DNA from: Haliotis cracherodii
Lineage: Eukaryota
Assembly (NCBI RefSeq): GCF_022045235.1
Contig: NW_027266267.1
Location: 42,656,001 to 42,720,000 of the forward strand
DNA length: 64,000 bases
Direction of reading: 5' to 3'
In this document: positions 362 through 36,075 of the stretch, piece by piece
How the letters are laid out: each line of letters begins with the position of its first letter
Position numbering within the stretch: the stretch's first letter is position 1
Position numbers and translations under genes: made by a program
Notes under the pieces: generated by a model
What the model saw: the letters and a program-made list of their open reading frames with translations, nothing else
Database searches by the model: none
What the model was told of the DNA's origin: nothing

Positions 362-700
362 ACACATTTTCTCACCTGTATCAGACCATATAGGACCAGT
401 ATTGGGACGGCCACAACGAGAAACAATGGCGTGCCGTATGAGATGATGGTGACGATGGTAACGAACCTGGACACATTGTTCTCACCTGTATCACAACGTA
501 TAGGACCAGTATTGGGACGGCCACAACGAGAAACAATGGCGTGCCGTATGAGATGATGGTGACGATGGTAACGAACCTGGACACATTGTTCTCACCTGTA
601 TCACAACGTATAGGACCAGTATTGGGACGGCCACAACGAGAAACAATGGCGTGCTGTACGAGATGATGGTGACGATGGTTATAAACCTGGACACATTGTT
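362..700 (-). repeat. 110-bp tandem repeat: exon 3' end + GT donor (2 extra copies)
   Basis: CAG|gtgaga at 595, 485 and 375. Confidence 0.93.
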
Positions 701-906
701 CAGCCATTGCCTCAAGATCCGTGCCATCTGGCCGTCAATAATTCCAACATCGCGGGTAAAGCGGTTCATGATTCGTCCCGTTGGAGTTGTGTCGAAGAAT
801 GCCATTGGTTGTCTGAGAACGTTGTCCAGGAGGTTCTGGTGGAGTGTGGCAGCAGCACGGACCATCTGCGTGTAGGTGGCAGCCACGAAGAAGAATATCA
901 TGATGG
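596..906 (-). CDS. ABCC1: ABCC1-like exon, 311 bp (..[29 protein letters not shown]...LYVVIQ)
   Basis: ttccag|CC ... CAG|gtgaga. Confidence 0.94.
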
Positions 907-35722: not shown

Positions 35723-36075
35723 CTGGAATACAGAACATCATATTATCGGGGGAGGACTGTCTTATGTGGAGGTGGAGGAAAAAGACCTGGAGAGTCAGCC
35801 TCAACCAGCCACGCGGCACCCACACCAGCACTGTGTGATGGAAGCATGGTGAGAACTCGGGCCATGTGTTGTTCAACAACAGATCCACGTCCTGGAATAC
35901 AGAACATACTATTGGGGGAGGACTGTCTTATGTGGAGGTGGAGGAGGAAGACCTGGAGAGTCAGCCACAGCCAGCCACGCGGCACCCACACCCGAATCAT
36001 GTGAAGGATGCAAGATGAGAACTCGGGCCACGAGTTGATCAACAACAAGATCCACGTCCTGGGATACAAAACATT
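35600..36075 (-). repeat. ~168-bp tandem triplication: acceptor + 5' two-thirds of the TMD0 exon (2 extra copies)
   Basis: ccag|GACGTGGATCT at 35722, 35891 and 36058. Confidence 0.92.

What the first reader, a model, noticed from the sequence alone, without database searches (positions are those of the whole stretch)
362..36075. Gene-wide system of splice-junction-anchored tandem arrays
Seen: at least 11 of 21 exons are abutted by a private tandem repeat whose unit crosses the exon-intron boundary. Donor-type arrays (exon 3' end + GT, extending into the downstream intron) have periods 110, 51, 52, ~80, ~80, 45, 41 and 80 bp. Acceptor-type arrays (AG + exon start, extending upstream) have periods 48, ~23 and ~168 bp. 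The units are unrelated to each other, so each arose independently from its own junction. The same pattern occurs in the neighbouring paralog. Inference: either a mutational process nucleates tandem duplication at splice junctions, or junction-spanning duplications are uniquely tolerated and then expand. This would drive intron growth and create many decoy or alternative splice sites per junction. I do not know of a named system for this.
Basis: partly seen in the sequence, partly recalled or inferred. Interest (0 to 1): 0.92.

Follow-up and report, generated by a model that had tools for sequence, protein, structure and literature searches.

The report
Splice-junction minisatellites in an ABCC gene
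Half of the exons of this mollusc ABC-transporter gene are flanked by tandem repeats built from copies of their own exon edge plus splice site; this is real and far more frequent than chance, but it is the little-known "mirage" minisatellite already described in lancelets and in human F7, here in a new animal group and at unusual density.

Summary
The window holds 21 exons of a minus-strand ABCC/MRP-type transporter gene. Eleven of them carry a private tandem array whose unit contains the exon end plus its splice site. Eight are donor-type (periods 110, 51, 52, 80, 77, 45, 42, 80) and three are acceptor-type (48, 23, 169).

- **More arrays outside the window.** The rest of the gene has five or six more. 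The neighbouring paralog and four other ABCC paralogs show the same pattern.
- **Enrichment.** Over six genes, 46 of 102 arrays touch an exon edge, against 12.2 expected if seeds fell uniformly (no simulation reached 46).
- **Splicing.** Transcript contigs of two congeners splice at the exon-proximal copy and skip all decoys.
- **Not an artefact.** Independent DNA contigs break at the array edges.
- **Decoys are intact.** 401 of 422 decoy donors keep GT.

These are "mirage" minisatellites (amphioxus Adh3, globins, PGBD5), and human F7 intron 7 is analogous.

Low-copy duplications show no junction excess. The bias therefore seems to act on expansion or persistence rather than on birth; its cause is unknown.

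This scan has already reported the same phenomenon on other DNA of this genome, which earlier notes call abalone.

The parts
361..701 (-). 110-bp donor-type array, 3.1 copies. Unit = last ~105 nt of the exon ending at 596, plus GTGAG.
   Evidence: decoy exon copies also hit the ABCC HMM
596..930 (-). Exon Et (TMD2, ABC_membrane). The donor GT is at 595-594. The upstream end is approximate.
1339..2530 (-). 51-bp donor-type array, 23 copies, with the frame open throughout. Unit = last ~36 nt of exon Es plus ~15 nt of intron. 8 decoys have GT changed to AT.
2492..2733 (-). Exon Es (start of TMD2). The upstream end is approximate.
9222..11552 (-). 52-bp donor-type array, ~46 copies. Unit = last ~19 nt of exon Eq plus ~33 nt of intron. 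44 of 45 decoys keep GT.
11532..11721 (-). Exon Eq (end of NBD1). Transcript contigs end exactly at the first donor.
12087..12691 (-). 80-bp donor-type array, 7.5 copies. Unit = last ~52 nt of exon Ep plus ~28 nt of intron.
12640..12806 (-). Exon Ep (ABC signature / Walker B). The spliced joint 11721|12640 uses the first donor copy.
14847..14974 (-). Exon En (Walker A). The acceptor used is the exon-proximal one, at 14974.
14975..15562 (-). 48-bp acceptor-type array, ~11 copies plus a diverged last unit. Unit = ~30 nt of intron 3' end plus the first ~18 nt of exon En.
16245..16964 (-). 77-82-bp donor-type array, 9 copies. Unit = nearly the whole 86-nt exon El plus GTAATG.
16885..16970 (-). Exon El. 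The spliced joint 16110|16885 uses the first donor and skips 9 decoys.
23798..24268 (-). 45-bp donor-type array, 10.5 copies. Unit = last ~13 nt of exon Eg plus ~32 nt of intron. All decoys are intact.
29158..29946 (-). 42-bp donor-type array of exon Ee (the exon ends at 29933), ~14 copies. It is split at 29586-29784 by an inserted repeat element.
31374..31987 (-). 80-bp donor-type array of exon Ed (the exon ends at 31953), 7.7 copies. All decoys are intact.
32887..33060 (-). 23-bp acceptor-type array in front of and overlapping the start of exon Ec. Which of the last two acceptors (32922 or 32899) is used was not resolved.
35597..36074 (-). 169-bp acceptor-type array, 2.8 copies. Unit = ~55 nt of intron 3' end plus the first ~114 nt of exon Ea. 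The last copy (acceptor at ~35727) is the one that continues into the rest of the exon.
19521..22355 (-). 28-bp array, 100 copies, 150 nt downstream of the exon Ei donor. The unit has a strong sense-strand donor motif and resembles that donor. It is probably junction-derived, but this is not proven.
63611..64000 (-). 55-bp donor-type array of the upstream paralog's penultimate coding exon (continues to L004:435). It is the same unit as the focal gene's array at L002:5621-6934.

Best explanation
These are "mirage"-type minisatellites.

1. **Origin (inferred from anatomy).** At each affected junction, a short stretch of 23-169 bp containing an exon edge and its splice signal was duplicated in tandem. 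Ordinary minisatellite dynamics (replication slippage, unequal exchange) then expanded it to 3-100 copies.
2. **Position (shown).** Every extra copy lies on the intron side.
3. **Why the arrays are harmless (shown for four arrays, inferred for the rest).** The spliceosome uses only the exon-proximal site: the first donor, or the last acceptor.
4. **State of the decoys (shown).** The decoys are not degraded.
5. **Excess at junctions (shown).** The arrays are over-represented at junctions about 3.8-fold.
6. **Stage of the bias (weakly indicated).** The excess appears among expanded arrays, not among two- to three-copy duplications. Units that carry a splice signal therefore seem to expand or persist better. 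The cause is not known.
7. **Net effect.** Introns grow, and the gene carries hundreds of silent decoy splice sites.
For: - **Unit anatomy and register:**
- **Exon map and gene identity:**
- **Splicing at the proximal copy:** joints 11721|12640 and 16110|16885, and exon pieces ending at 14974 and 11532, in transcript contigs of two congeners.
- **Independent DNA support:** DNA contigs of another sample of the same species, and of a congener, stop ~30 nt inside the arrays on both flanks.
- **Enrichment:** 46 observed against 12.2 expected. For the paralogs chosen blind, 28 against 6.9.
- **Strand asymmetry:** a strong donor motif is present in the unit consensus on the sense strand in 33 of 102 arrays, and on the antisense strand in 5 of 102.
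- **Decoys intact:** 401 of 422 decoy donors keep GT. The GT columns are 97.5% conserved, against 93.9% for flanking columns.
- **Low-copy against expanded arrays:** 6 of 44 against 41 of 87 touch junctions, Fisher p = 2e-4.
- **Literature for the same structure:** PMC3087553, PMC3902484, PMC1557585.
Against: - The RNA evidence comes from contigs of related species, not raw reads of this individual. It covers only four arrays. Contigs drop rare isoforms, so low-level decoy use is not excluded.
- Copy numbers could not be confirmed, because short-read contigs collapse arrays.
- The low-copy class has shorter periods (median 22 bp against 42 bp) and may include unrelated repeats, so the "expansion, not birth" inference is soft.
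- The paralogs are not fully independent: shared ancestry and gene conversion were both seen.
- The exon edges used for the statistics are HMM-hit ends, with a 15-nt tolerance, not annotated boundaries.
- No mechanism for the bias was demonstrated.
Confidence: 0.72

Rival explanations
1. A splice-site-coupled mutational process nucleates the first duplication at junctions. Candidates include polymerase or spliceosome pausing, or R-loops at exon-intron borders that cause fork stalling and template switching. On this view the excess is a birth bias.
For: - The junction excess is real.
- Eight exons carry arrays on both sides, against 3.8 expected (p = 0.016).
- The same exon (HMM 1392-1457) is flanked by arrays in five paralogs.
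Against: - Two- to three-copy duplications touch junctions at about the chance rate, 6 of 44.
- The position of the junction inside the unit is arbitrary: the exon share ranges from 6 to 105 nt. That does not suggest a break fixed at the splice site.
- Recurrence among paralogs can be inheritance or gene conversion.
Confidence: 0.15
2. The decoy arrays are kept by selection because they do something. For example, stacks of U1-binding donor sites might protect long introns from premature cleavage or cryptic exons, or might boost recognition of the true site.
For: - Decoy donors are at least as conserved as their flanks.
- There is a strong sense-strand bias of donor motifs, even in arrays that do not touch an exon: 12 of 56 against 1 of 56.
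Against: - High conservation of every column is expected from recent array homogenisation.
- Arrays were chosen for having a consensus donor, which biases the comparison.
- Acceptor-type arrays (18 of 46) do not fit a U1 model.
- There is no expression or functional data.
Confidence: 0.08
3. Chance overlap in a minisatellite-rich genome. Duplications arise everywhere, and junction-spanning ones are simply tolerated, at the rate expected from sequence space.
For: - Arrays are very abundant: 19-48% of each gene span.
- Low-copy duplications fit the chance rate.
Against: - 46 observed against 12.2 expected; no simulation in 200,000 reached 46.
- 17 against 5.0 even after dropping the focal gene, its neighbour and one near-duplicate paralog.
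- The strand asymmetry of donor motifs.
Confidence: 0.04
4. Assembly artefact: the arrays were created by mis-assembly of repeats.
For: None found. Copy numbers could not be checked.
Against: - Contigs from an independent sample and study of the same species, and from a congener, reach ~30 nt into the arrays from both unique flanks (15533-16286, 14198-15080, 16904-17350, 11748-12129).
- Word depth is raised over array units.
- The same architecture is seen in six genes on three chromosomes.
Confidence: 0.01

Closest known systems
"Mirage" minisatellites of amphioxus (Adh3: Canestro et al. 2002, cited in PMC3087553; globins BflGb6/9: PMC3087553; PGBD5 and TnC: PMC3902484)
   Same: - Tandem repeats whose unit spans an exon-intron boundary.
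- Both 5' and 3' boundaries are affected.
- Units of 10-160 bp.
- Most copies keep their AG/GT signals.
- Normal splicing is unaffected.
- The mechanism of origin is stated to be unclear.
   Different: - Different phylum: a mollusc, by earlier notes of this scan, not a cephalochordate.
- Much higher density: 16-17 arrays in one gene, up to 100 copies, and arrays make up about half of the gene.
- A quantitative junction excess is shown here.
- Somatic and allelic instability, a hallmark of the Adh3 case, was not tested.
Human F7 intron 7 37-bp VNTR (PMC1557585)
   Same: The first repeat element spans the exon-intron boundary. The authentic donor is followed by identical pseudo-donors that stay silent, and the most upstream site is chosen.
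   Different: That is a single locus in a mammal with experimental proof of 5'-to-3' scanning. Here there are many loci, acceptor-type arrays as well, and only transcript-contig evidence.
Intron gain by tandem duplication of an AGGT-containing exon segment (Rogers model; discussed in PMC3087553, PMC2891723, PMC4974935)
   Same: A tandem duplication places duplicate splice signals next to an exon. The duplicated exon sequence becomes intronic.
   Different: No new intron is created here. The arrays sit inside pre-existing, conserved introns and only lengthen them.

Membership tests
Mirage (junction-spanning) minisatellite | Head-to-tail tandem repeat of minisatellite unit size | tested here: met
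   TRF gives periods of 23-169 bp, 2.8-46 copies and 78-96% matches.
Mirage (junction-spanning) minisatellite | The unit contains an exon edge together with the adjoining intron sequence and splice signal | tested here: met
   Copies read in register against the exon map. Decoy exon pieces hit the ABCC HMM repeatedly.
Mirage (junction-spanning) minisatellite | Both donor and acceptor boundaries can be affected | tested here: met
   8 donor-type and 3 acceptor-type arrays in the window; 28 and 18 over six genes.
Mirage (junction-spanning) minisatellite | Regular splicing is not disturbed; the genuine copy is used | tested here: met
   Transcript contigs of two congeners join at 12640, 16885, 14974 and 11532, which are the exon-proximal copies. 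Only four arrays were covered, and by contigs, not reads.
Mirage (junction-spanning) minisatellite | Length instability or polymorphism between alleles or tissues | not testable with these tools
   Only collapsed short-read contigs were available, and the single read-laying run was used.
F7-IVS7-type donor VNTR | Pseudo-donors identical or near-identical to the authentic donor remain silent, and the most upstream one is used | tested here: met
   401 of 422 decoys keep GT. The first donor is used in the 80-, 77- and 52-bp arrays.
ABCC / MRP subfamily ABC transporter (host gene) | TMD0-TMD1-NBD1-TMD2-NBD2 order with ABC_membrane and ABC_tran domains | tested here: met
   Exon-by-exon matches to full-length ABCC representatives over HMM positions 9-1493. 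Pfam PF00664 and PF00005 match single exons.

The most novel reading that the evidence does not exclude
Minisatellite growth in this genome is coupled to splice signals. Units that carry a functional 5' (or 3') splice site on the transcribed strand expand or persist preferentially. The cause would be either a splicing- or transcription-linked DNA process or selection for stacks of U1/U2 binding sites. This would make splice-junction amplification a major, directional driver of intron growth in abalone. Junction-touching arrays are 46 of 102 in six genes, and arrays of all kinds make up as much as half of a gene.
Probability: 0.2. Interest if true: 0.75.

Novelty: new member of a known kind. 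Interest (0 to 1): 0.45.

Why it matters
Each array is a natural experiment in splice-site choice. Up to 46-100 near-identical, intact decoy sites sit directly next to the used one, in dozens of junctions of one gene family.

A mollusc genome with this density would allow three things:
- **A genome-wide test of first-come or scanning models of site selection.** The scanning model has so far been shown experimentally for one human gene (F7).
- **Measurement of how much intron length is created by junction amplification.**
- **A test of why junction-bearing units are over-represented.** The amphioxus literature leaves this question open.

Practically, gene predictors and read mappers will be misled by these decoys. 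Annotation of such genomes needs to know about them.

Tried and rejected
- **Chance.** Rejected by a uniform-seed model on array-collapsed introns.
- **Assembly artefact.** Rejected for the presence of the arrays by independent DNA contigs.
- **Preferential destruction of decoy donors (selection against decoys).** Not seen: GT columns are no less conserved than flanks.
- **Donor-over-acceptor bias as a sign of a tolerance filter.** 28 against 18, not significant (p = 0.18).
- **The neighbour's single-copy Ep junction as the pre-expansion state.** It holds one unit plus 13 nt of a second, inside a 98%-identical patch. It is more likely a conversion-tract end or a contracted array, so it gives no evidence on the founding event.
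- **Terminal partial units of 8-14 nt (110- and 77-bp arrays).** These fit seeding between short direct repeats but do not prove it.
- **The 28-bp unit as a dispersed genome-wide satellite.** It is not: only this locus matches at more than 83% identity, plus a few arrays at 66-78% elsewhere.
- **The 32-bp array at 59436-60847.** No adjoining exon was found.
- **The original mirage paper (PMC117041).** It is not held, so it is cited through PMC3087553.
- **A literature search for a mollusc description.** It found only an ordinary intronic minisatellite in an abalone gene (PMC6905558).
- **Steps not taken.** I did not build or search a joined spliced model; exons were searched one by one by reference. 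Organism identity was not verified by me.

Full report
**What is in the window.**
- TRF reports 83 rows of tandem repeats, most of them between 361 and 36074.
- The ORF list shows minus-strand exons of an ABC transporter.
- A representative search with one transmembrane exon returned full-length ABCC/MRP proteins.
- tblastn with these proteins, and an HMM built from 26 of them, placed 21 exons on the minus strand between window 35728 and 3. They cover HMM positions 9-1100.
- Pfam confirms ABC_membrane and ABC_tran on single exons.
All searches were exon by exon, by reference.

**Check of the observation.** I printed every large array on the minus strand in register with its exon. In eleven cases the unit contains the exon edge and its splice signal.

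| Type | Period (bp) | Copies | Exon | Array coordinates |
|---|---|---|---|---|
| donor | 110 | 3.1 | ends at 596 | 361-701 |
| donor | 51 | 23 | ends at 2492 | 1339-2530 |
| donor | 52 | ~46 | ends at 11532 | 9222-11552 |
| donor | 80 | 7.5 | ends at 12640 | 12087-12691 |
| donor | 77-82 | 9 | 16885-16970 | 16245-16964 |
| donor | 45 | 10.5 | ends at 24254 | 23798-24268 |
| donor | 42 | ~14 | ends at 29933 | 29158-29946 |
| donor | 80 | 7.7 | ends at 31953 | 31374-31987 |
| acceptor | 48 | ~11 | starts at 14974 | 14975-15562 |
| acceptor | 23 | ~7 | starts near 32922 or 32899 | 32887-33060 |
| acceptor | 169 | 2.8 | starts near 35727 | 35597-36074 |

- The exon share of the unit ranges from about 9 nt to about 105 nt, so the junction sits at no fixed place in the unit.
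- The units are unrelated to each other. The exceptions are a 28/31-bp pair in two introns and the arrays shared with the paralog.
- Some arrays (39 bp at 3499-5957, 10/49 bp at 7526-8255, 71 bp at 26338-27654) show no exon content.

**Beyond the window.**
- The window is G000:C4:42656001-42720000 of a 1.18-Gb assembly. I fetched 30 kb to the left and 60 kb to the right.
- The 3' third of the focal gene carries more junction arrays:
  - A 28-bp donor array (L003:9143-9814).
  - A 35-bp acceptor array with 46 copies (L003:1472-3087).
  - A 63-bp donor array (L002:8446-9392).
  - One exon (HMM 1392-1464) flanked on both sides, by a 74-bp acceptor array (L002:7050-8098) and a 55-bp donor array (L002:5621-6934).
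  - A 34-bp array of 77 copies (L003:5740-8356). Its unit is recognisably the end of the upstream exon plus its donor, although it now lies 340 nt away.
- That makes 16-17 junction arrays in one gene of about 31 exons.
- The upstream paralog (window 63368-95360) has at least four junction arrays (55, 80, 40 and 29 bp).

**More than chance?**
- I located further ABCC paralogs by homology only, fetched four of them, and ran the same HMM and TRF on them.
- Over the six genes there are 102 arrays of at least 100 bp. Forty-six lie within 15 nt of an HMM exon edge.
- The null model works as follows:
  - Each array is collapsed to one unit.
  - A seed of that period is then allowed to fall anywhere that is not wholly exonic.
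  - The same 15-nt tolerance is applied.
- It expects 12.2 junction-touching arrays. None of 200,000 simulations reached 46 (z = 10.4).
- For the four paralogs that were not chosen for their repeats, the result is 28 against 6.9. After dropping one near-duplicate it is 17 against 5.0.
- As a second, independent sign, the unit consensus holds a strong donor motif on the transcribed strand in 33 of 102 arrays, against 5 on the other strand. Among arrays that touch no detected exon, the figures are 12 of 56 against 1 of 56. Many "intronic" arrays are therefore probably junction-derived too.
- An unrelated gene on the other strand, an immunoglobulin-domain exon at L001:4690-5139, also has a 50-bp array starting at its donor.

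**Are the arrays real, and which copy is spliced?**
- I laid two probable RNA runs of related species, and two DNA runs (another sample of the same species and a congener), on window 11450-17350. That is 5,901 letters, within the operators' limit.
- Transcript contigs give the joints 11721|12640, 12806|13700, 13876|14847 and 16110|16885. They give exon pieces 14847-14974, 16885-16970 and 11532-11721.
- The donor used is thus the first copy of the 80-, 77- and 52-bp arrays. The acceptor used is the last, exon-proximal copy of the 48-bp array. All decoys are skipped.
- DNA contigs run from unique sequence to about 30 nt inside the arrays on both sides, in both species, and word depth rises over the units. 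The arrays are therefore not an assembly artefact, and at least two of them exist in a congener.
- Limits of this evidence: these are contigs, not reads; they come from relatives as far as RNA is concerned; rare isoforms and copy numbers cannot be seen.

**State of the decoys.** In 27 donor-bearing arrays, 401 of 422 non-proximal copies keep GT. The GT columns (97.5%) and the other consensus columns (96.2%) are no less conserved than the flanks (93.9%). Decoys are neither purged nor obviously decaying.

**Birth or growth?**
- Tandem duplications with at most 3.5 copies touch exon edges in 6 of 44 cases, which is about the chance rate.
- Arrays with more copies do so in 41 of 87 cases (Fisher p = 2e-4).
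- The sense/antisense donor asymmetry is likewise confined to the expanded class, 28 against 4.
- This points to a bias in expansion or persistence rather than in the founding duplication.
- The low-copy class has shorter periods and may be heterogeneous, so I treat this as an indication only.
- The donor-to-acceptor ratio (28:18) is not significantly skewed. Exons with arrays on both sides are somewhat over-represented: 8 against 3.8 expected, p = 0.016.

**What is known.**
- Full-text searches led to the amphioxus literature.
[quoted passage not shown] They were later found in globin genes, troponin C and PGBD5.
- In those cases the units are 10-160 bp, both boundary types are affected, splicing is undisturbed, and the mechanism is stated to be unclear (PMC3087553, PMC3902484).
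- The human F7 gene has a 37-bp VNTR whose first unit spans the exon 7 boundary. Its pseudo-donors are functional but silent, because the most upstream site is chosen by 5'-to-3' scanning (PMC1557585).
- I found no description in molluscs. The one abalone paper that mentions an intronic minisatellite does not link it to a junction.
- Earlier follow-ups of this scan reported the same structures in other genes of this genome, which they call (black) abalone: chitinase, CABIN1, SLC46, KIAA2013. I did not verify the species myself.

**Verdict.**
Arrays are 48% of the 50-kb focal gene, against 34% of its 32-kb neighbour.
- It is wrong that the phenomenon is unnamed.
- This is a new lineage, and a far denser case, of a known kind of repeat.
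- The open point, here as in amphioxus, is why junction-bearing units are favoured.

Noticed in passing
window 24392-24622 (-): An in-frame 114-bp (38-codon) tandem duplication, 81% identical, lies inside coding exon Eg in the variable linker before TMD1. It is an exonic tandem duplication that survived because it keeps the frame.
   Followed up: partly
window 12599-12815 vs L005:2642-2858; L002:6111-7188 vs window 63611 to L004:695; window 35609-35899 vs L007:1241-1528: The focal gene and its neighbour are about 70% identical in most exons. Around exactly three array-bearing junctions they are 98%, 94% and 90% identical. These look like gene-conversion tracts that coincide with the minisatellites.
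   Followed up: partly
window 35750-36074 (-): Both decoy copies of the 169-bp unit have a donor-like CAG|GT at the end of their exon part, where the genuine exon reads CCGAT. Each decoy is therefore framed by an acceptor and a possible donor and could act as a cassette exon. No RNA data were laid here.
   Followed up: no
window 29586-29784: A ~200-bp insertion of a dispersed repeat splits the 42-bp donor array in two. Similar copies lie at 34133-34308 and 18718-18881 and in the neighbour. The array is therefore older than the insertion.
   Followed up: partly
window 59436-60847 (-): A 32-bp array of 44 copies carries a strong sense-strand donor motif. It lies in the 27-kb stretch between the two ABCC genes, directly downstream of a SINE-like element. 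No adjoining exon was found; it may belong to an undetected 5' exon.
   Followed up: partly
L001:4012-5592 (+), window -25988..-24408: An immunoglobulin C2-set exon of an unrelated plus-strand gene is bracketed by two arrays: a 39-bp array ending at its acceptor side and a 50-bp array starting at its donor.
   Followed up: partly
window 19521-22355 and 25542-25756: Two different introns hold arrays with the same core unit (90% identical over 50 nt). Weakly similar arrays (66-78%) lie at G000:C14:12968660-12971427 and a few other places. The origin is unclear.
   Followed up: partly
window 13223-13616 and 14011-14404: Contig word depth is 10^3-10^5 here in all four runs and both species, which indicates very high-copy dispersed elements inside two introns.
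   Followed up: no
L002:5621-8098 and homologous exon in four other paralogs: The exon encoding HMM positions 1392-1457 (NBD2 signature region) has an array on at least one side in all five paralogs in which it was sampled, and on both sides in four of them. Periods differ: 55/74, 55/80, 65/68, 65/103, and 37 on one side only.
   Followed up: partly
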